Shown: piece after piece, positions 8,817 to 19,735 of the stretch
Numbering within the stretch: position 1 is the first letter of the stretch
How the letters are laid out: each line of letters opens with the position of its first letter
Assembly (NCBI GenBank): GCA_000708835.1
Contig: DF236950.1
Coordinates: 477,866 to 541,865 of the forward strand
Direction: 5' to 3'
Length of the DNA stretch: 64,000 bases
Source: Klebsormidium nitens
Taxonomy: Eukaryota; Plantae; Klebsormidiophyceae
Program-made: the position numbers and the translations under genes
The notes under the pieces: model-generated
What the model saw: the letters and a program-made list of their open reading frames with translations, nothing else
Told to the model about the DNA's origin: nothing
Databases searched by the model: none

Positions 8817-10837
8817 ATGATTGGTTTCATCGTAGTGGGGTTGGGCATCGCTGCCGCTTTGTACATGCTGCGGCCCAAGGACCCAATCATTAAGGTGGTA
8901 CAGGTTCACATCAAGGGGTTTAGTGTCCGGACACAAGTCACCCCCATACCTGCGGTTCTTGTCGACCTGGAGGTTTCGATGGATGTCTTGTGCAAGAATC
9001 TGAACCCTGTTCCCATCTCCTGCAGTGAGGTGAGTCCAGCCTTATCTTGCTCGTTCTAGGTTCAATGATCTTTCATTTGGATTGACGTGAGGTGCGATCC
9101 AAGCCCAACCGACAGGCTTCGTGGACTGCATGAATGACCATCTCTGACCTCCGCTTGAGAATGCTGAGTAATTGGAAAGAAGGTGCAGTGGGCCTGCTCA
9201 TATTGCCTCGGTCATTTTGCAAGGCCTTGCTGGGACAGAGATGCTTTTGTCGTCAAGTTTGTGATCTATCGCTTCTAGTTGTCATGGGCAGAGATTAAGT
9301 CGCAGTAGGTGGCTTCCTTTTGAAGTATTATTGTGCACGTCAGGCAATTGTTGTTTTGGATCTCGCTTCTTCTGACAGTATTCTTTTGCGCAGGCGCTCA
9401 TGGATATTGTCTACGAGGGACAGAAACTTGGTACTGGAGATGTCCCCTTCAGCGAACAGCCCGGTTGCAGCAGCAGAATCATCACCATCCCAGGGAAGAT
9501 CAGCAGCATTGCTGGTGAGTTCTCCTCGGTAATATGCTCTGGCGGAGACAAGGTCAGGATAACATGCCCAGGAAAGGCGAACATTCTTTTGAATTGATGC
9601 TGGGGTGTCCATTGACAGGGCAGTTCTACTAGGGCAAGACTCTTTCAATTGCAACTATACACCAAAACGGTTTGGCTCTTCAGTGGGCACTTGGTCCCCG
9701 TAGTTTCCTTCAACCTGGAGGACGTAGAAGCATTCGCACGGATAGAATCATATGTCGGAACTGCGCGTCTCAGTTTCAAGTTCAAATGTATTCGGCCCTG
9801 AAGGGACTCACGGGATGTCCTTTTTCGAGGGAGCTCTTACCCGTACACAACCCAAGGGCTCTGTACTTCAAGCGGGGACTTTAGGTCACTTTACCTGGCG
9901 GACTGGCTAGTTCCAACGAGTGCTAGGTCACCCAATGTTTTAGTTTCTTCCCATGTCTTATTGGTTGCTCAACAAGTTGTTTCGATTTCGCAAAGGCAAT
10001 TACACGGAAGGGTCTCTTGAATGGAAAGAGGAATTTTTAAGGGTGAAGTCTTGTTGCGTCTAGTCTGTAGTAGACAACTTTGACCTCTTTTACAGATACT
10101 GATGACCAAATTGTCGCATTGTCTGTCTCAGTCTCATTTGCACATTTACAGGGCAGGCTTCGAAGAAGAGTCTCGCCTCTGCAAATCCCTGAATTGGTGC
10201 AATTGCATTCGCAGCTCTGGGCACACTTGGCCCAAAGTTGTTATCGGACATCGCTAAGCGGGAGGTCAAGCTCACGGGAATAGTAACCCTGAAGGGAGTC
10301 GCCAAGCTAGGTGCAATCAAGCATCGATTCAACGTAAGCTTCTTGCTTCAGGAGACTGTCTCTCTCTGTTTAAAATATCACTTTGGAATCGTTGAGCATA
10401 CTACTGTGCCCCTTCGATGCTTTCGTCTCCAAAAAGTCGTTCAGCTGCGTTGCAAAAGTGGTTTTGGTCTGGCCTTCAACTTCAAGATTGCTCGCCCTTC
10501 TCTGGATTCTGGAAAATAGTTCGTTCACTGGCGAAAGTCTGTTCTGTTTTCTAGCATGTAGGATGTATTCAAGCAAGCGTTATTTGCGAGGCAAAGCCCT
10601 TTTCTGCATAATCGACGACTTTTACTCCTAGTTTCCCCTCACATTGACATCACACATCTTTCATTCCGGCCTTGAAGCTAAAAGTCACAAAACTCTTCTT
10701 TTGTGCAGGTAGGGGTCAACTGCGACGTAGTGGTTGACCCGCTCATGGTCGATGTGATCAGGAGCAGTAGTGAATGTGACATGGATCTTTTCCCAACACT
10801 GAAGGGCGATGATCAAAATCCGGGAAAGACGGAGTAG
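8817..10837 (+). CDS. LEA_2 (late embryogenesis abundant 2 / NDR1-HIN1-like) domain protein, 4 exons, N-terminal TM anchor
   Basis: Exons 8817-9029, 9394-9514, 10217-10333 and 10709-10837 splice in frame: MIGFIVVGLGIAAALYMLRPKDPIIKVVQVHIKGF...NLNPVPISCSE|ALMDIVYEGQKLGTGDVP...|ALGTLGPKLLSDIAKREVKLTG...|VGVNCDVVVDP...TE*. TM followed by PxxP, an NxNP motif and xxYxGxxLG is typical of LEA_2. Confidence 0.85.
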
Positions 10838-11669
10838 ACCTTTAATGCTACATTCCTCTGAATATCAAATCGGAACAGTCTGGCATCAGGTAAGTTCGAG
10901 TCTATCAGAGTGTCCACAATCTTAGGGTCCCACGTGTAGCATCTCATCGTTTTCAAAATTCAGGGTCTGTACCGGGTATAAGCGCGCGGCAGGCCATTTT
11001 TGAAACCTGACACCCTCTTCTGAGCATTGTAAGGGGCGTGCACATTGCATGGGCCGGACACCCTCTTAGACCGTACGACCCATAATCAACATACTGGCGC
11101 TGAATCTGTTCTCAACAACTATAGTTGATACTGCTCTCAAACGCTAGTGAGAGCCCCGATCGAGTCCGCCCCAGGCAACCAATTCGTTGGGGGCCTTATA
11201 TGTACTAACTGATTCATCATGTGAGCTATATATACCATGTTGTCACCGTCACATGTGCTGCACCAACTAAAGAATAGATATATTAGCTTATATACATATA
11301 TGCGACTGATGTTGCACATTCAGAGACCTCATCGTTACATACTGTGGTACTCTGCACGCAATCGTGTGCCCCTGTCACATGGCAGTGTATGCATATATCA
11401 ATGCGCGCTCGATCTGATAAATTGATAAAATAAATGCGTTGATCAGTTCCTGCATGGGACATGGCTGCATGCACATGGCGCAGTGAATCATTGGCTGCAG
11501 AGCCTGTCATGCTGATCTTCAATTGCTCGGAAACCGTCTAGCAAGCACCGTCACCTTCGTCTTGGAGTTGGTGCACATATAGCGCGCATGGGTAAACATG
11601 TTAAGGCGCATGATTTGCGCGGGCACACTATATACGGCTGTGCCTTGCAACTACTTCCGAGTATGTGGC

Positions 11670-14600
11670 TCATGTGACCGTCAAGAGATCCTGTCTTTTG
11701 CTGAGGGCGCTATTTACTATTGTTTCGAGGTCTTTCGTTGCTTTGGCGACGTCTGGCTGATCAAACACTCCCGACACAATGGCTACTCCATCAGGACCTT
11801 TTGTATTCGCCTTGGCGGCCGACAGTACTTCAGCTGCATTCGTCGTTTTGATCCCTCCTATGGCAACGACCGGAAGCGGAGTGCTCTCGCAGACCTCGAG
11901 CAGACCTTTTATCCCAATCGTTACGTTATTTTCTTTTGTGTTGGTCGGAAAGACGCCCCCTGACCCGAGGTAATCCGCCCCATCTTCAAGTGCCTTTCGC
12001 GCCTGCTCTGGCGTCTTGGTAGATATCCCGATGATCCTGTCCGGCCCCAGCAGGGCACGTGCCAGCCTGAGCGGCATGTCCGACTGCCCGATGTGCACCC
12101 CGTCGGCCCCCACCGCCAGCGCGACGTCGATCCGATCATTGATCACGAGCGGGACTCCCGCTTCCCGCGCCAGCGCCACCACCTCTTGCGCCTCCTTCAC
12201 AAAGTCCCCGGTGCCGATGTCCTTCTCCCGCAGCTGCAGAATGGTGGCGCCCCCCTCAATGGCGGCCCGCATCGCCTCCACGTTGCTGCGGCCCCACCGC
12301 GCGTTCATGCGCGAGTCGCTGACGGCGTACACCGCCAGGTCGGATGGCCGGAAGCGCGCGCGGGGGGACTCCCGCGAGGTACCCCATGACGTTGTCCCGT
12401 AAAAGTGATTCAGCGGGCCTGCAAAACGGGGATACGGGGAAAGCACGCAAAGTCAGCACTTTTCAGATGTCTTCGGTTTGCAAGAAAGTCTAGGTCAGCG
12501 GCTGATGCAGCCCGTGCTTTTGAACATTCGAAGCTGCGCCAGGAATGCGGACTCTACTGAGGCACGCACGTCGTGAGAATCTCGATCCTGTGAAAAGCAC
12601 GAAGAGCAGCAAGATCGTGCGGACAGTTACTTGCAGATCCGCCCAGCAACGTGCCTGATTTGCCGCAAGCTTTGCCGCAGTCCTCACCGTGCTTCCCCTG
12701 GCCCAGCTGCAACCAGGCGCTGCTCTTGAGGGCCTCCGTGAGGTACCCCTTGGCCGCGCTCACTGCCGCCACGAGCGGCCGCCCCTTGGCCAGCTCCGCC
12801 GCGATGCCCGACGCCAGCGTGCACCCCGTCCCGTGCGTGTTCCGCGTGTCGACCCACCCCGCCTCCAGCTCGTGCAGCCTCTCGCCGTCAAACAACACAT
12901 CCACCGCCAGTCTTCCCCCTGCCACGTGCCCCCCCTTGACCAGCACGGCCTTGGGCCCCAGCTCGAACAGTGCCGTGGCGGCCCGCTTCATGCCCTCCAG
13001 GTCCGTGATGTCTTCTTCCCACCCCAGTAGAGCCTTGGCCTCGGGCAGGTTGGGCGTGATGACGTCAGCGCGCGGCAGGAGCAGCTCTCGCAGCGCCCCG
13101 AGCGTGTCCCCGCCCACCAGCACATCCCCGCTGGTCGCCACCATGACGGGGTCCACCACCAGCCGCACCGCGGGCCGCTTCGCCAAGCACTCAACGACCG
13201 CGCGGATGATGTCAGCAGACGGCAGCATGCCCGTCTTGACGCAGTCGCACCCGATGTCTGACAGCACCGCCTCGACCTGCGCTCGCACGAAGTCGGCTGG
13301 CACGGGGTGGATGCCCTGCACGCCCGCCGTGTTCTGTGCGGTCAGCGCCGTGACGACGGACATGGAGTACACCCCGAGCGCGCCGGCCGTCTTCATGTCC
13401 GCCTGAATTCCCGCACCCCCGCCCGAGTCCGACCCCGCTATCGTCAGCATGCGGGGGACTATGGGCGCCTGCCCTGCCGCCTTCTCGACCTGGGCTGAGA
13501 GCGTGTACAGAGTGGCGCGCCCGGTCGATGCGGAGGCCAATGCGCGGGAGGGGCTAGCGGAGAAGTTTCCGGCTGGGCTGCCGTTTCCAGTGGGTGGGGG
13601 TGTTGGGCGCGTGGCGGGCTGACGACAGACGTCCAGCAGGCGGTCAATCTCTGACCAGGACTGGGCCTGGAGCAGGCGGCCCGTGCCCCTGCGGCTCTCC
13701 ACTGGGCGGTCCTGATGCTGTGCCAGAAACTCGGGGACGGCCTGGAGGGTGACCCCAAACGCACGGCAGACGCGCTCAGCGCTGGCGCTGCAGCCCAGCA
13801 GCACGCCCAGATCTGCGCTGACCAGGGGCAGCAGGTCCGTCACGCTGTCGCCAACGTACACAGTCAGGCCCTGTGACTCGGCGGGCTTCCTCGCACTTGG
13901 AGGAGAGGCGCCGGGGGGCGCAGCTGCGGAGGCCAGCCGTTCGAAGCAGGCCTCCTTGTGGAGGGGCGTGTGGATGCCCCCCGAGAGGGCCCCAGTAGAG
14001 ACCTCGCCCTGCTGTTCCAGCTCGTTGCTCAAAATCTCAGGAGGGGGCGTAACAGCTGCATCAAGGAGGCGATAGCGTTAGAATGCAAATCGAAGGCGTG
14101 AAAGGGATAGTCTTCTCGAATTCTGTAGAGGAGTCGGGACCAACAGACAGCAGGCAGGTATGAGGACATGTTTTGAACTTGACCTCCTTCGGATGGATGC
14201 GCATCAGTACAGCGATTGAAGCAACTGCCTAGTTAGCCAATCCACCATATTATAGATCGGCTCTTCCCTGAAACACAGAGAAGTGGAGGCAGGAGCTTCT
14301 TATGGACCTTGGTGAAGATTTTGCGTGGGGAATTTCGTTGTACCTGGCCAGGCGTCCAGGTGCAGGGCCGCAGAGAGGAGCTCTCGGGAGGGGTTCACGG
14401 AGAGGACGGACACAGCGATTTTGTCATGAGCACAGCGGTGCAGCACGCGCAGGCAGCCCTCCTGCAGGGGAACACGCCCCGCCCTGACGGCGTCCGCAAT
14501 GGCGGGGCGGGAGACGCCTGCCAGCAGCTTGTTGCGCACCAGGTCGTCCATGCTGGCCTGCTCCATGACAGACATGGCCGCCAGGAAGCGCCGCAGGGCA

Positions 14601-15740
14601 GGCAGGTCAAATGCCTCACGGCGCTGGGGGGCCTGCGAGGAGGCCGCCCACAGTCAGTGCAAGGATAGAGTGAGAGAACCGTGAAGGACAACGATGAGGG
14701 ATCATGTCGCAGGAGCTGTATTCTTTAAAAGCATACCAAGCAGTACAACTGGTTGTAGCTCTGGCTAGATTGCGCACCAGAACTTGTTTCCTTTAGTCCA
14801 CTGCATCATCTTCAGACAGGAAATGTTTTTGTTAGAAGCTGTGGGTGAGGTGAACATGGTCTGGCCCCACCTCCTGCAGTGCCAGGGCCATGGCCTTGTC
14901 GTACTGCTCCATGTACGCCAGCCCCGCTTCTTTCCAGGCCTGCCGGATCGCCGCCCCTCTCTCAAGATCATTCCGCGCCTCCGCCTCCTCTGCCGCTAGT
15001 TCTCCGTACAGGGCAGTGGTGTCACGCTGTGTGCACGTAGAATCAAAGTCCACCACCAGCCTCGAGACACAGCTGCCGCGAGGGCTGCCCATCGGAGCCA
15101 GCGGAGCAGTGCGGCCAGAAATGGTGGTAGCACCAGCTGTCGTGCGGGTCAAGGATGCTTGATACCCGGCAGTGACGGGTCTGTCGAGGCCCCTCTCGCG
15201 GTTGATGCGGCTGAAGGACAAAGGCCTGTGGGGTCGCCTGGGCACCTGAGGAGAGGGTGGACACTGCAAGGACTTGATGGTGGTTGGTGGTTGCAAACCC
15301 CCGACAATCTTTGCAACACTGGGGCTAATAGCAACGAGGAAGAGAACGTGGACAAAACATGGTGGTGGTATATATTGCACCAGAAACCATAACAAAACCC
15401 TGTCAGAGGCGTGGAAAGTGATGGGAACATTGCCTCTGCAATGCTGTCCATCGGAGGTCCCCCACAGACCGCTGAGCAATGAGATTCAATTTCAGGGATG
15501 GCGGAGATATGCCAGGCTCTGGATTGTGAGATGAATGCATGGCCAGTTGATCAAGCACAGCGCCACTGCAGGCTTGCCGATGCGACCAAGGTCACTCACC
15601 GGCCTTATTGATGGTGGCAGCACGGCGCTCCGAGCAGGGGACGCGTGAGCTTTCCCAGGTTTGCTTGATAGATTCCACTGCCACCTGCAGCTTCCAACAA
15701 CTCTGGACCGAATTAGTGAAGCCGCAAGCGGAGAACCCAT
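11670..15740 (-). CDS. TH1: Fused thiamine enzyme: TH2-type HAD phosphatase + HMP(-P) kinase (ThiD) + thiamine-phosphate synthase (ThiE), with a putative transit peptide
   Basis: Exons ~15210-14871, 14632-14344, 14055-12688 and 12418-11670 join with matching phases (0, 1, 1). HAD motifs: VVDFDSTCT, VLSVN, PLHK, YVGDSVTDL. ThiD: LTIAGSDSGGGAGIQADMKT, KTGML, VVDPVMVATSG, VLVKGGH, NTHGTGCTLAS. ThiE: LQLREK, PLVINDRIDVA, GVHIGQSD, DYLGSGGVFPTNTK, VVAIGGI. The 5'-most exon (15740-15600) is tentative. Confidence 0.9.
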
Positions 15741-16475
15741 TGCAGCTCCCACATCCGAGACGTCTCCAGTCCAGCCAGATGTTGCGACCGATAAGTTGCT
15801 GGCACCACCTCTGATGATTTTATAAGGTCATTGCTCCCATTGCCGATCAATTGCATGAGAATGAACCAAGAAGGGTGCACCGTGCAGCATCAGCAGCGCC
15901 ACATTTCAGCGATCAGCTGGCCATAGGTCATATAGGTACATGGCATGCAGTCCTGAACACGAAGGGAAGGGTTGAGCTTTAACCTTCTAAGTGATTTCGC
16001 ATTTCTTTATTAACCGTCGTGGCCTCGAAGTGAGTACCGTAACCCACCTCTGTTGACCCACCGTATACCCCACGTCTGTCGGGTTACGTAAAGCTCGGGT
16101 TAGCAGCTACCGGCCCAGGTCAGGTTAAAGTCGTGTTGCAAAAGAAACATCTAACCAAGATTCTGGAATCTCCGTTGTCCAATCAATGCAATGCAATGCA
16201 CTGCCCTTTGCTTTGCCCTGGAGGCTGGGGCCGGGCCTCTGCTTTGCCGTTTGCTTTTTGGCATTGCGCAGCAGCTTGAACCTCTTTGGATCAGACTGAG
16301 AAGTTCGGGGAGCGTCCTTGACGAGTCCTTTATGGGCCGTTTGCCGCAGCTAGGCAACAGGGCTGCTGAGGTTTCGGAGGGGTGCTTTGAAGGTTGCATG
16401 CATGAAGAGTACGAGGCGGGAGGTTCAGTAAGGAGTTGATTGCAGCTAAGCGGCTGAACTGCCTTTCTCCCGAAG

Positions 16476-19400
16476 ATGGTGGAGCCACGTGGGCAGCTCC
16501 AGTTGACGTTGGCGAGTCTTTCCTCCAACATGCATGACGCCCTGCTACAGCTGACCTCCAATGACGATTCCGACAAGAATGACAATGCGGAGTCTGCATT
16601 GGCCCCATTCGAGCATCCCCAGCTCCCACTGTTTCTCCATAAGCTGGACAAGCTGAAAGCGCAACTAAACAAGACGTGTGATGGTTGGAGGAGTAGATGT
16701 GTTGAACTGCAAACGCAGGCTGGGAGGCAGATGCAGCACTTTCAACGCAGCCTACAAGCAACCGCCCAAAGACTCCCACACCAATTTAAGCGTCCTCCCG
16801 GCCAAAGTCCTCGCAGGAGAAAGGCGAATCGAGGTTTGCACTTAGTCAGTGCGGTCGGCAATCCTGCACGTGCAAAGGTTGGGGCAAGCAGCAGCGCATC
16901 CGGTGTGGGGGCCAGCAAGAATGCACTTGCGGGGGGCCTGGCCGGGGGCTTGGTCGCCTTGTCTCTGTATCCGGTGGACACCATCAAGACCCTGGTACAG
17001 GCAGAGACAGGGGCTGGCCAGCGGTCAATTCCCCGCATCTTCCAGAAGCTGGTGGAGAAACATGGTGAGGGCAGCCCAGAGTGGTAGAATTGAACCAGTC
17101 TCCTACTTCTCTCTCAAGTCTAACTGGCCCCTCTGGTGGCAAGTGGGGATCTATATCTCTTTGAACAGCTTGAAAGCTTCAGTTCGAGAGTCAGTGCACA
17201 TTCATCTTCACTTTGGAATGTGAACAAAGTGCTCTGCAGCGACGGAACCACACAACCAATTGTAAGCAGTATTTGAAGTTCAAGGTACAATTGGAATGTG
17301 TGGCTGGATTGAGATCCTGCTTGCGAATGCCGATGAGGCACACGATGCTCACACTCCATGCCTCGCCAGGGATGTTTGGGCTGTATCGAGGATTGGGCAG
17401 CAACCTAGTGACGGCCACCCCGATCTCTGCCATCTATGCCAGCACGTACGAGGCCGTGAAAGAGGTGCTGCTGCCCCACCTGCCACCGGTGAGGGACTCG
17501 CTGCGCCCTTCGATATGTAAGCTTGCCCCTGTGCATCTGCGGGCAGTGTTTATAGTAACTTTGTGGATTTGTAATGCACAACAACATGCTTTAATCTGTT
17601 GGTGGTAGATAGTGCCTGTGGCCATGGGACATTCTCTAGGAGAGGTTTACATTGCAAAGGACTTGTGGCTGTGCAGAAGTTCCAGTCGGTGGCCCACTGT
17701 AGCGCGGGGGCAGCCGCCAGCGTGGCCACCTCGTTTGTGTTTACCCCCAGCGAGGTGGTCAAGCAGCGCATGCAGTACACCAGCCAGTACGCCAACAGCT
17801 GGTCAGCCCCAGCCCTGCCTCGCTGCCTGCCTTCCTCGCCTGTTCGGAAATGATGTTGCAGAGTATCGTCCTCTGGAAGGATAACACCTCTCACATCTCT
17901 CTAACCATTTGTTTAATATGGAGAGTGATCTTTGTCTCAACTGCTTCTCAGTTTCTCCAACGTAGTGTTGACCTGTTGAAGTTTGAGGCCAAGATCGCTG
18001 TTCTGGCTGCGTTCAGGTCGGCTTTCTTGGGCATTCTGCGAACAGAGGGGATCACCTCGCTGTACAACGGGTGGGGAGCTGTGCTCGCCAGAAACATTCC
18101 GAACTCCATTATCAAGGTTGGCTTCCAAAATGGGAGCAGCTCCTCCTGCCTTGACCTGATTGACCTGTTGACTTGATGGCCTGATCAAATGGATGCTTAG
18201 GCGCATGTTTGGTGGCTAGTGTAGCTTCCAGGAGTAAGATTCTGCTTTCACGAGTCGAAGAGAATCCTTTGGTGGATATTCGGCTCATGATCAGTGTATC
18301 CCATCACTCAAGAGTCAATGGGTCACAGCGCTCTGTGAGCTAGTCAAAGAAGCGAGTCGACTTTCCATGCATCGCTTTTGTCAGAAGTCGAGGGGAGTTT
18401 TGCGCTTCGTTAAGATTTCAGCACGTTTCGATGTTGTTGCAAGGGGTTATCGCAGGCAGACCTCTAGTTGGTAACGAGCACAAACCAGAATGCGCCACAG
18501 CTTATTGTACCCGCTACTGAATGTTATGCGCTTGGTTACAAGAGCAGTGTGCTCTTCGTAGCGACGCCTCAGGTCCCGTGAGGAAAGCCATTCATCAATG
18601 TCTAACAGTCGCTCGTTGTTGGTTGTGCAGTTCTACACGTACGAGAGTCTCAAGAAGCTGGCTCTGGACAGGCGGCCCGGAGCCACCCGGCTCACGCAAC
18701 TAGAGTCGGTGAGCCTCTCACTGGTGCCCCTCACTGAGCCGTCACTCCGTTCGCGGTCTAGCTTCAGGGCCCATTCGGGGCCAGCTGTGAAGAGTAAGGC
18801 AGTAGTGCAGTTGCCACGCAACGATAGAACCGCTCCGTGCTTTGAATCCCGACTGTGAGCAATGGCGGCTTAGGATGTCGAGCTCACACAAGCTGGAAAA
18901 CTGACGCTTCTTGTCCGGTTTCGCAGCTCGTGATTGGCGGCGTGTCCGGCGTCTCGGCGGCCTTCTGCACTACACCCTTCGACGTGGTCAAGACCAGGCT
19001 GCAGAACCAGGTACTGCGGTCCTGGAATTTGCCATTCCTCCTGAGAAACGCCGGCCATCTCTTCGTCTCGTCTCCGCACTGCCTCCACTGTCGCCCTTTT
19101 TACTTTTGCCAAATGTTTATGCGCACAAAGGACTCAACAGGGGCAGGATGGCCCGCACTTGACCGCGTCGCATGACCGGTGCAGATGCCGGGCCAGACGA
19201 TCCAGTACGGCGGGGTCACGGAGTGCTTAAGAAAGATTGTCGCGGAAGAAGGCGTGGCCGGCCTGTACCGGTGAGGGCACATCCGTCCGCTGATGTCCTC
19301 GAGGTCCAAGAAGTCGCTGGCAGGGCTCGCCGAGCCGTTTCTTGCAACGCTCCCCTCAACCTCTCGTTGCACCACTCTGAAATAGGTGTGGGTACAGTGT

Positions 19401-19735
19401 TTAGAGCGCTCTGCGTCCTCTATCTGCAATGACAGGCTGAATGCGAAGAAGCCCCCGAGTATTCTCACGCCGTGCAGTCTCGTCGGGGCTTCTTGCCGTC
19501 AGATCTATAGATATGGAGGCAGCGTCGCAGAAGTGATGGTTTCCATGTTCGCCGCAGGGGAGTCGGGCCGCGCCTCTTCATCTACGTTTCTCAGGGGGCC
19601 ATCTTCTTTGCATCGTACGAAGTGCTCAAACGCGTGCTGCAAGACGAGTGGCGCATTGCGCCAAGAGAAGGGGGCACAATCGGATACAAGGAATCCGCGC
19701 CCGCCCCGTTGCAGAAGGCGGCCAAGATAGGATAG
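16476..19735 (+). CDS. Mitochondrial carrier family protein (SAM-carrier-like clade) with long N-terminal extension, 8 exons
   Basis: Three carrier repeats carry Px[DE]xx[KR] signatures: LYPVDTIKT, FTPSEVVKQRMQ and TPFDVVKTRLQ. Other motifs are GLYRGLG, SLYNGWGAVLARNIP and GLYRGVGPRLFIY. All splice sites are GT-AG; the stop is TAG at 19733-19735. Confidence 0.9.

What the first reader, a model, noticed from the sequence alone, without database searches (positions are those of the whole stretch)
11670..15740. Three-domain thiamine enzyme: HAD phosphatase fused to ThiD-ThiE (a TH2-type phosphatase joined to TH1)
Seen in sequence: one uninterrupted exon (14055-12688) carries the HAD C-terminal half (ILSNEL...PLHK...YVGDSVTDLLPLVSADLGVLLG), a Pro/Ser-rich linker and the whole ThiD domain. 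The flanking exons join in phase to HAD motif I (VVDFDSTCT), motif II (LSVN) and ThiE. All four HAD catalytic motifs look intact. I see no TenA domain in the ~1.3 kb before the divergent carrier gene. Established knowledge: land-plant TH1 is ThiD-ThiE only and is plastidial, while TMP is dephosphorylated by a separate TenA-HAD protein (Arabidopsis TH2) outside the plastid. Inference: this alga may make TMP and dephosphorylate it to thiamine on one, probably plastid-targeted, polypeptide. That could allow channelling and a different compartmentation of the pathway. I do not know of this architecture in eukaryotes, but cannot confirm its novelty without a search.
Basis: partly seen in the sequence, partly recalled or inferred. 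Interest (0 to 1): 0.8.

Follow-up and report, generated by a model that had tools for sequence, protein, structure and literature searches.

The report
Fused vitamin B1 enzyme, split in annotation
In the alga Klebsormidium nitens one gene encodes a single 973-residue protein that joins a TH2-type phosphatase to the two-enzyme TH1 of vitamin B1 synthesis; the public annotation wrongly cuts it into two genes, and the same fusion is already present, unremarked, in many green algae.

Summary
On the minus strand, 15740-11670, five exons encode one 973-aa protein: an N-terminal presequence of about 105 aa, a HAD phosphatase, a Pro/Ser linker, ThiD and ThiE. The linker is under purifying selection, and two relatives keep its reading frame.

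The organism is Klebsormidium nitens. Its public annotation splits the locus into a 411-aa HAD protein and a 485-aa ThiD-ThiE protein. That split needs a 166-nt intron that no contig shows, and its second model starts inside the ThiD domain.

The HAD domain keeps all four catalytic motifs and folds confidently as a HAD-IB phosphatase. It is homologous to the HAD half of plant TH2. The ThiD-ThiE half is sister to land-plant TH1.

The novelty claim fails. At least 36 database proteins from chlorophyte algae (Chlamydomonas, Chlorella, Bryopsis, Tetraselmis and others) carry HAD-ThiD-ThiE, often with TenA in front. I found no paper describing this.

ThMP phosphatase activity, plastid targeting and channelling remain inferences. 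This scan had noted the same stretch once before.

The parts
15741..15942 (-). 5' UTR of about 200 nt. It holds 9 upstream ATGs. The last one (15754) opens a short out-of-frame uORF that overlaps the main start.
   Evidence: RNA contigs run 96-142 nt beyond 15800.
15600..15740 (-). Coding exon 1 (aa 1-47), the start of a presequence rich in Ser/Thr/Arg/Pro/Ala.
   Evidence: ATG at 15740 is the first in-frame ATG after an upstream stop. Residues 1-105 have 2 acidic, 17 basic and 22 Ser/Thr residues. The exon is identical to the public model P0001.
15246..15599 (-). Intron 1 (354 nt). One run uses an alternative acceptor at 15263, which adds 6 in-frame residues.
   Evidence: Joints 15242/15597 (cut +3) in X3, X6 and X9, and 15263/15600 in X1.
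14871..15245 (-). Coding exon 2 (aa 48-172): the rest of the presequence, then HAD motif I (DFDST, D113/D115/T117) and the start of the cap.
14344..14632 (-). Coding exon 3 (aa 173-268): HAD cap helices and motif II (S250 in SVLSVN).
13706..14055 (-). First part of exon 4 (aa 269-385): the HAD C-terminal half with motif III (K302) and motif IV (GDSVTD, D338/D342).
   Evidence: Alignment A1 invariant columns. AF2 model pLDDT 89.6. dN/dS 0.18-0.32 against relatives.
13457..13705 (-). HAD tail plus Pro/Ser-rich linker (aa 386-468). It is coding, in frame, and has no stop.
   Evidence: Open frame. dN/dS 0.25 against L003 and 0.39 against L002, with one in-frame 3-codon indel. RNA contigs are continuous over 14055-12687.
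13490..13655 (-). The 166-nt 'intron' of the public gene model KFL_000010785. It shifts the frame to ...RRRQGRRP-stop. Not supported.
   Evidence: P0001 matches the fused protein up to residue 403 and then diverges. No contig in four runs shows this joint.
12688..13456 (-). ThiD domain (HMP/HMP-P kinase), aa 469-724, with the GSDSGGGAGIQAD and HGTGC motifs.
   Evidence: Pfam PF08543 2.9e-92 and TIGR00097 2.9e-94. Motif positions. dN/dS 0.08-0.16.
12419..12687 (-). Intron 4 (269 nt), between ThiD and ThiE.
   Evidence: Joint 12417/12687 (cut +1) in all four runs.
11670..12418 (-). Coding exon 5 (aa 725-973 plus the TGA stop): end of ThiD (GKHGPLNHF spans the junction) and the ThiE thiamine-phosphate synthase domain (about 12332-11766).
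   Evidence: Pfam PF02581 1.6e-61, profile 1-180 of 180; TIGR00693 1.2e-60.

Best explanation
This is one nuclear gene of the streptophyte alga Klebsormidium nitens. It makes one mRNA and one 973-aa protein. The order is an organelle-type presequence of about 105 aa, a TH2-type HAD-IB phosphatase (about aa 106-385), an 80-aa Pro/Ser linker, ThiD (HMP/HMP-P kinase) and ThiE (thiamine-phosphate synthase). Shown here: the gene structure, the single spliced transcript contig, the open and selected linker, intact catalytic motifs in all three domains, homology of the HAD part to the HAD half of plant TH2, and orthology of the ThiD-ThiE part to plant TH1. Inferred: ThiD makes HMP-PP, ThiE couples it with the thiazole phosphate to give thiamine monophosphate, and the attached HAD domain hydrolyses that product to thiamine. 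If so, the last three plastid-side steps sit on one polypeptide, and free thiamine rather than its monophosphate leaves that compartment for pyrophosphorylation. The public annotation (a 411-aa HAD gene plus a 485-aa ThiD-ThiE gene) is a mis-split of this gene. The architecture is not unique to this alga. It is the streptophyte representative of a fusion common in chlorophyte algae, where a TenA domain often sits in front.
For: Single gene:
- In each of four runs from four studies, one 3.06-3.24 kb contig covers all five exons with four GT..AG introns removed and runs unbroken through 14055-12687.
- There is no stop between HAD and ThiD.
- Linker dN/dS is 0.25-0.39, with an in-frame indel against two relatives that keep the same exon order.
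- The public split model needs an unsupported 166-nt intron. Its ThiD-ThiE model starts at Met489, after the conserved GSDSGGGAGIQAD motif.

Domains:
- Pfam and NCBIfam identify ThiD and ThiE and PF12710 identifies HAD.
- In a 31-sequence HAD alignment the invariant columns are exactly the HAD catalytic residues, and K. nitens keeps 41 of 52 conserved columns. The fern TH2 keeps 37 of 53.
- The AF2 model has pLDDT 89.6 and pTM 0.88. Its best Foldseek hits are phosphoserine phosphatases, cytosolic 5'-nucleotidase III and MtnX.

TH2 type:
- phmmer gives 85 bits (1e-25) to fern TenA-HAD P0182 and 89 bits to TenA-HAD P0004.
- In the Atlas search the best TM by query, 0.85 over 284 residues, is to a 600-aa TenA-containing cluster of Streptophyta.
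- In the HAD tree K. nitens falls in a supported (95/93) 8-row clade with fern TH2.

TH1 orthology: the ThiD-ThiE tree places K. nitens as sister to Impatiens TH1, support 97/97.

Function by precedent: TH2/PALE1 is the TMP phosphatase of Arabidopsis (stated in PMC7868968). HAD ThMPase fused to ThiD is a recorded bacterial fusion (PMC4921024 Table S3).
Against: - All the RNA evidence is assembled contigs, not reads. A contig cannot prove that every molecule is full length. It cannot exclude a minor isoform or an internal start giving free ThiD-ThiE (for example at Met471).
- The HAD domain is only 28-34% identical to its relatives and sits on a long branch (3.03) in the tree. Its substrate cannot be read from sequence.
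- Some family-conserved cap residues differ: W to P253, D to H301 and nine others.
- The Pfam HAD score only just reaches the cut-off (27.2 against 27).
- The presequence was judged by composition only; no targeting predictor was available.
Confidence: 0.78

Rival explanations
1. There are two adjacent genes, as in the public K. nitens annotation: a stand-alone HAD protein of 411 aa that ends after a 166-nt intron in the linker, and a separate ThiD-ThiE protein of 485 aa.
For: The deposited annotation of GCA_000708835.1 has exactly these two models, 62 bp apart (P0001). The proposed intron has GT..AG ends. Contigs cannot exclude rare isoforms (tool caveat).
Against: No contig from four studies shows the 13655-13490 joint; all are continuous there. 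The linker is under purifying selection, and a relative at 72% identity keeps its frame through an in-frame indel. The 485-aa model starts at Met489, inside the ThiD domain, and loses the conserved GSDSGGGAGIQAD motif. At least 36 algal proteins carry the same domains fused in the same order.
Confidence: 0.05
2. The fusion is real, but the HAD domain does not hydrolyse thiamine monophosphate. It would act on another phosphoester, such as HMP-P/HMP-PP, thiazole phosphate or a damaged thiamine derivative, or it would serve a regulatory or structural role.
For: HAD substrate choice lies in the cap, and the K. nitens cap differs at several family-conserved positions. Identity to TH2-type HADs is only about 30%, on a long branch. 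Structurally similar stand-alone HADs of unknown function exist in fungi and cnidarians.
Against: All catalytic residues are kept and the domain is under purifying selection. The closest characterised homologue is the TH2 HAD. Across green algae the domain travels with TenA, ThiD and ThiE, all of them thiamine enzymes. ThiE's product is the substrate of the next pathway step, which is the usual logic of such fusions (PMC4921024).
Confidence: 0.15
3. The K. nitens fusion arose independently of the chlorophyte ones, as a recent lineage-specific join of a HAD gene to TH1. It would not be an inherited state.
For: K. nitens lacks the TenA domain that most chlorophyte fusions carry. Its HAD does not group with chlorophyte fused HADs but with a clade that also holds unfused TenA-HAD proteins from a fern and a cryptophyte. 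I could not sample any other streptophyte alga.
Against: The domain order HAD-ThiD-ThiE is the same as in all chlorophyte fusions. Both halves sit where a vertically inherited streptophyte gene should: HAD with fern TH2, ThiD-ThiE with plant TH1. The clade holding K. nitens HAD also contains four-domain fusions P0016, P0090 and P0181.
Confidence: 0.35

Closest known systems
Chlorophyte HAD-ThiD-ThiE and TenA-HAD-ThiD-ThiE proteins. Examples: Chlorella vulgaris D9Q98_009111 (P0160), Micractinium conductrix 'thiamine biosynthetic bifunctional enzyme chloroplastic isoform C' (P0161), Chlamydomonas incerta HXX76_000153 (P0009), Bryopsis BSKO_08025 (P0011), Tetraselmis (P0005/P0188), Raphidocelis (P0172).
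   Same: They have the same domain order, the same TH2-type HAD family with identical catalytic columns, and ThiD-ThiE within one Viridiplantae clade.
   Different: Most carry a TenA domain in front; K. nitens and the Chlorellales do not. K. nitens is a streptophyte. Its HAD and ThiD-ThiE halves group with fern TH2 and plant TH1 rather than with the chlorophyte sequences. HAD identity is only 28-34%.
Land-plant TH2/PALE1 (TenA-HAD thiamine monophosphate phosphatase).
   Same: The HAD domains are homologous: 85 bits to the fern protein, TM 0.85 to the Streptophyta TenA-HAD cluster, and a shared clade with 95/93 support.
   Different: TH2 has an N-terminal TenA domain and no ThiD-ThiE. It is reported as cytosolic or mitochondrial (PMC7868968). 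Here the HAD is joined to TH1 behind a presequence, and no TenA lies in the window.
Land-plant TH1 (bifunctional ThiD-ThiE, chloroplastic).
   Same: The C-terminal 500 aa are its orthologue: sister to Impatiens TH1 with 97/97 support, and full-length ThiD and ThiE profiles.
   Different: Plant TH1 (556 aa in Impatiens) has only a transit peptide in front of ThiD. K. nitens has about 280 aa of HAD phosphatase plus a linker there.
Bacterial ThMPase(HAD)-ThiD fusions (Hasnain et al. 2016; Henry et al. 2016, Table S3, 'ThMPase1/ThiD').
   Same: A HAD phosphatase sits N-terminal to ThiD, and the fusion logic links TMP hydrolysis to thiamine synthesis.
   Different: These are a prokaryotic, two-domain form. 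Whether their HAD is the same subfamily as the TH2 type was not tested here.

Membership tests
HAD superfamily phosphatase (subfamily IB, C1 cap) | Motif I DxDxT, with the nucleophile and acid/base aspartates | tested here: met
   DFDST has D113, D115 and T117. These columns are invariant in all 31 aligned family members.
HAD superfamily phosphatase (subfamily IB, C1 cap) | Motif II Ser/Thr, motif III Lys, motif IV (G)DxxxD | tested here: met
   S250, K302 and G337-D338...D342 all fall in invariant columns.
HAD superfamily phosphatase (subfamily IB, C1 cap) | Rossmann-like core with a helical cap inserted after motif I | tested here: met
   The AF2 model has pLDDT 89.6 and pTM 0.88, with long helices 25-106 between strands 1 and 2. 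The top Foldseek matches are phosphoserine phosphatases, cN-III and MtnX, E 1e-8 to 3e-4.
HAD superfamily phosphatase (subfamily IB, C1 cap) | Pfam model above the gathering score | tested here: met
   PF12710 scores 27.2 bits against a cut-off of 27 on P0001, so it only just passes. It is not detected on single exons.
TH2/PALE1-type thiamine monophosphate phosphatase | HAD domain homologous to that of plant TH2 | tested here: met
   phmmer gives 1e-25 to fern TenA-HAD. The tree clade has 95/93 support. The Atlas structural match to the Streptophyta TenA-HAD cluster has TM 0.85.
TH2/PALE1-type thiamine monophosphate phosphatase | N-terminal TenA (thiaminase II/salvage) domain on the same polypeptide | tested here: not met
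   There is no TenA similarity in the N-terminus or anywhere in the 64-kb window; all tblastn hits have E > 0.7.
TH2/PALE1-type thiamine monophosphate phosphatase | Selective hydrolysis of thiamine monophosphate | not testable with these tools
   This needs an enzyme assay or complementation.
TH1 bifunctional HMP-P kinase / thiamine-phosphate synthase | Complete ThiD followed by complete ThiE | tested here: met
   PF08543 covers profile positions 1-241 of 246 at 2.9e-92. PF02581 covers 1-180 of 180 at 1.6e-61. TIGR00097 and TIGR00693 score above their cut-offs.
TH1 bifunctional HMP-P kinase / thiamine-phosphate synthase | Orthology to plant TH1 | tested here: met
   Sister to Impatiens TH1, support 97/97, inside a 100/100 green-lineage clade.
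TH1 bifunctional HMP-P kinase / thiamine-phosphate synthase | Plastid targeting | tested here: inconclusive
   The first 105 aa have 2 acidic, 17 basic and 22 Ser/Thr residues, a composition like a transit peptide. No predictor or localisation data were available.
TPP-riboswitch-controlled thiamine gene | TPP aptamer (RF00059) in a UTR or intron | tested here: not met
   No Rfam match at E <= 1 in 9000-19000 on either strand.

The most novel reading that the evidence does not exclude
The fused gene is the ancestral green-lineage state. Under this reading, a TenA-HAD-ThiD-ThiE 'TH2-TH1' polypeptide existed in the common ancestor of chlorophytes and streptophytes. K. nitens keeps the HAD-TH1 link. 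The separate TH2 and TH1 genes of land plants arose later by gene fission, which moved the thiamine monophosphate phosphatase step out of the plastid. That would date a change in pathway compartmentation to after the Klebsormidiophyceae branched off. I found no paper describing it.
Probability: 0.45. Interest if true: 0.55.

Novelty: new member of a known kind. Interest (0 to 1): 0.4.

Why it matters
1. It corrects the reference annotation of a model streptophyte alga. Two models, one of them starting inside a domain, become one three-enzyme gene.
2. It shows that the link between the TH2-type phosphatase and TH1 is not a chlorophyte oddity. It also occurs on the streptophyte side, with both halves orthologous to the plant genes. 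That is independent 'Rosetta stone' support for the role assigned to TH2.
3. It raises a testable question: when did land plants separate the two genes, and with them the compartments of the last steps of vitamin B1 synthesis?
4. It gives a natural fused enzyme in which channelling from ThiE to the phosphatase can be tested.

This is a modest advance, not a new kind of system.

Tried and rejected
- Pfam and NCBIfam on single exons found no HAD. The domain is split over three exons, and it was found only on the joined N-terminal protein P0001.
- Rfam with relaxed thresholds found no TPP riboswitch or any other RNA family in 9000-19000.
- The word-based protein search restricted to the HAD C-terminal half gave only 4 hits because of its length window. 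The exhaustive representative search was needed to see the long fusions.
- The search with TenA-HAD protein P0004 returned only 9 hits, none from K. nitens. Whether K. nitens has a separate TenA or TH2 gene is therefore open. I had no tool to search its genome.
- Eight literature searches and four papers read found no description of the algal fusion. The key paper, Mimura et al. 2016 (PMC5134987), is not held, so I cannot exclude that it mentions such fusions.
- A pseudo-enzyme reading of the HAD was rejected because the catalytic residues are intact and dN/dS is 0.18-0.32.
- The spliced full-length protein could not be passed to the database tools, which accept references only. Whole-protein analyses were run in scripts or on exon pieces.
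Full report
**What is in the sequence**

On the minus strand between 15740 and 11670 there are five coding exons:
- 15740-15600
- 15245-14871
- 14632-14344
- 14055-12688
- 12418-11670

All four introns have GT..AG ends. The exons join in phase to a 2922-nt CDS encoding 973 aa.

Exon 4 is one open frame. It holds the C-terminal half of a HAD domain, a Pro/Ser-rich linker and a complete ThiD domain. Exon 5 holds ThiE. Pfam and NCBIfam give:

| Domain | Pfam | NCBIfam |
|---|---|---|
| ThiD (exon 4) | Phos_pyr_kin 2.9e-92 | TIGR00097 2.9e-94 |
| ThiE (exon 5) | TMP-TENI 1.6e-61, full profile | TIGR00693 1.2e-60 |

. No TPP riboswitch or other Rfam family is found in 9000-19000. No TenA domain is found anywhere in the window.

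**Organism and public annotation**

A protein search returned an identical entry, KFL_000010785 of Klebsormidium nitens. It is 411 aa and carries HAD only. In the deposited assembly (GCA_000708835.1, DF236950.1) this model is followed 62 bp later by a separate 485-aa ThiD-ThiE model.

The 411-aa model matches my protein up to residue 403. It then uses a 166-nt intron (13655-13490) that shifts the frame into a stop. The 485-aa model would start at Met489. That is after the conserved GSDSGGGAGIQAD motif at residues 476-488, so it starts inside the ThiD domain.

**Transcript evidence**

Eighteen runs hold half or more of the sampled words of this stretch. The share of about 0.7 matches the exonic fraction of the stretch. 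I laid the contigs of four runs from four different studies.
- In each run, a single contig of 3062-3241 nt covers all five exons with the four introns removed (CT..AC on the plus strand). These are therefore spliced RNA.
- Each contig runs without a break from 14055 to 12687.
- No run shows the annotated 166-nt intron.
- Intron 1 has two acceptors: 15245 in three runs and 15263 in one, which adds 6 in-frame residues.
- Caveat: these are assembled contigs. They show that the fused form exists and dominates the assembly. They do not show that no minor isoform or internal start exists.

**Comparative evidence that the linker is coding**

Two relatives have genomic contigs with the same exon order. 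L003 is about 90% identical at the protein level and L002 about 72%. In both, HAD-C, linker and ThiD lie in one frame. dN/dS by segment:

| Segment | vs L003 | vs L002 |
|---|---|---|
| Linker (aa 386-468) | 0.25 | 0.39, with one 3-codon in-frame indel |
| HAD C-terminal half | 0.18 | 0.32 |
| ThiD | 0.08 | 0.16 |

Together with the RNA contigs, this makes the two-gene model very unlikely.

**The HAD domain**

Residues 100-400 match, over their full length, the HAD parts of 45 other stored proteins. These include TenA-HAD proteins of a fern (Adiantum, 85 bits) and a cryptophyte (Chroomonas; name).

In a 31-sequence alignment the invariant columns are D113, F114, D115, T117, S250, V251, K302, G337, D338, D342 and G352 in full-length numbering. 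They include the four HAD motifs. K. nitens keeps 41 of 52 columns that are at least 80% conserved, comparable to the fern TH2 at 37 of 53.

AlphaFold2 on this alignment gives pLDDT 89.6 and pTM 0.88. Foldseek against the PDB returns phosphoserine phosphatases, cytosolic 5'-nucleotidase III and MtnX. These are the capped HAD-IB type.

In the ESM Atlas, the highest TM by query (0.85 over 284 residues) is to a 600-aa TenA-containing cluster that is almost entirely Streptophyta. That is the land-plant TH2 family.

**How common the architecture is**

The exhaustive representative search with exon 4, followed by Pfam scans, a word search and name look-ups, shows at least 36 distinct database proteins that carry the TH2-type HAD joined to ThiD, usually with ThiE.
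- **TenA-HAD-ThiD-ThiE:** Chlamydomonas incerta, Bryopsis sp., Tetraselmis sp. (transcript-derived), Raphidocelis subcapitata, Myrmecia bisecta and Trebouxia spp.
- **HAD-ThiD-ThiE without TenA:** Chlorella vulgaris, Micractinium spp., Parachlorella kessleri and Auxenochlorella.

Sources label these 'thiamine phosphate synthase', 'bifunctional enzyme' or 'hypothetical protein'.

I found no paper that describes the algal fusion. Two algal thiamine papers treat algal TH1 as a plant-like bifunctional enzyme. A bacterial 'ThMPase1/ThiD' fusion is listed in Henry et al. 2016. Mimura et al. 2016 could not be read.

**Evolutionary placement**
- **ThiD-ThiE tree** (31 rows, LG+C20): K. nitens is sister to Impatiens TH1 with 97/97 support, inside a 100/100 clade that holds all the green-algal fusions.
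- **HAD tree:** K. nitens lies in a 95/93-supported group of eight. The group holds the fern TH2, the cryptophyte TenA-HAD and three four-domain fusions of unknown origin. It is separate from the core chlorophyte group. The K. nitens branch is long (3.03), so its exact position is uncertain.

Both halves behave as vertically inherited streptophyte genes: the HAD of TH2 and the whole of TH1. The simplest reading is that the HAD-TH1 link is old in the green lineage and was broken on the way to land plants. With only one streptophyte alga and one or two land-plant sequences sampled, an independent fusion is not excluded.

**Mechanism**

Shown: three intact catalytic domains on one polypeptide behind a presequence-like N-terminus. 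Residues 1-105 have 2 acidic, 17 basic and 22 Ser/Thr residues.

Inferred from the known roles of ThiD, ThiE and TH2 (TH2/PALE1 as TMP phosphatase: PMC7868968):
1. ThiD phosphorylates HMP(-P).
2. ThiE condenses HMP-PP with thiazole phosphate to give thiamine monophosphate.
3. The HAD domain removes the phosphate, giving thiamine for cytosolic pyrophosphorylation.

Because the ThiE and HAD steps are consecutive, the fusion could favour direct hand-over of the intermediate. It also places the phosphatase step wherever TH1 resides, probably the plastid. Substrate specificity, location and channelling are all untested.

**Verdict**

It is a new, streptophyte member of a fusion family that is common but apparently undescribed in green algae. 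Interest is moderate.

The same stretch was noted once before by this scan (s1-267621). Another note (s1-290840) reports riboswitch-bearing THI1 and THIC genes elsewhere in this genome. This gene, by contrast, has no riboswitch.

Noticed in passing
window 15741-15942 (minus strand): The 5' UTR of about 200 nt holds 9 upstream ATGs. The last one (15754) opens a 13-codon out-of-frame uORF that overlaps the main start codon, and it is conserved in relative L003. This could be translational control in a thiamine gene that lacks a riboswitch.
   Followed up: partly
window about 16476-19700 (plus strand); L001:2006-5010; L003:971-3707: A mitochondrial-carrier-family gene (367 aa, Pfam Mito_carr) is transcribed divergently. 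Its start codon lies about 530 bp from the thiamine gene's transcript start. The pairing is conserved in relative L003. The carrier's substrate was not determined.
   Followed up: no
window 15246-15263 (minus strand): Intron 1 has an alternative acceptor. One of the four runs uses 15263 instead of 15245, adding six in-frame residues (CPPSPQ) within the presequence.
   Followed up: partly
proteins P0117, P0138 (969 and 961 aa; contigs up to 290 kb): These proteins have TenA, then a gap of about 200 aa without a recognised domain, then ThiD-ThiE. They did not match the K. nitens HAD in phmmer but group with HAD-bearing P0124 in the ThiD-ThiE tree. They may carry a very divergent or degenerate HAD. 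Their taxon is unknown.
   Followed up: no
ESM Atlas clusters: Stand-alone HAD proteins of about 300 aa in Ascomycota and Cnidaria resemble the TH2-type HAD closely (feature score 0.98; TM 0.83). They could be unrecognised thiamine monophosphate phosphatases outside plants.
   Followed up: no
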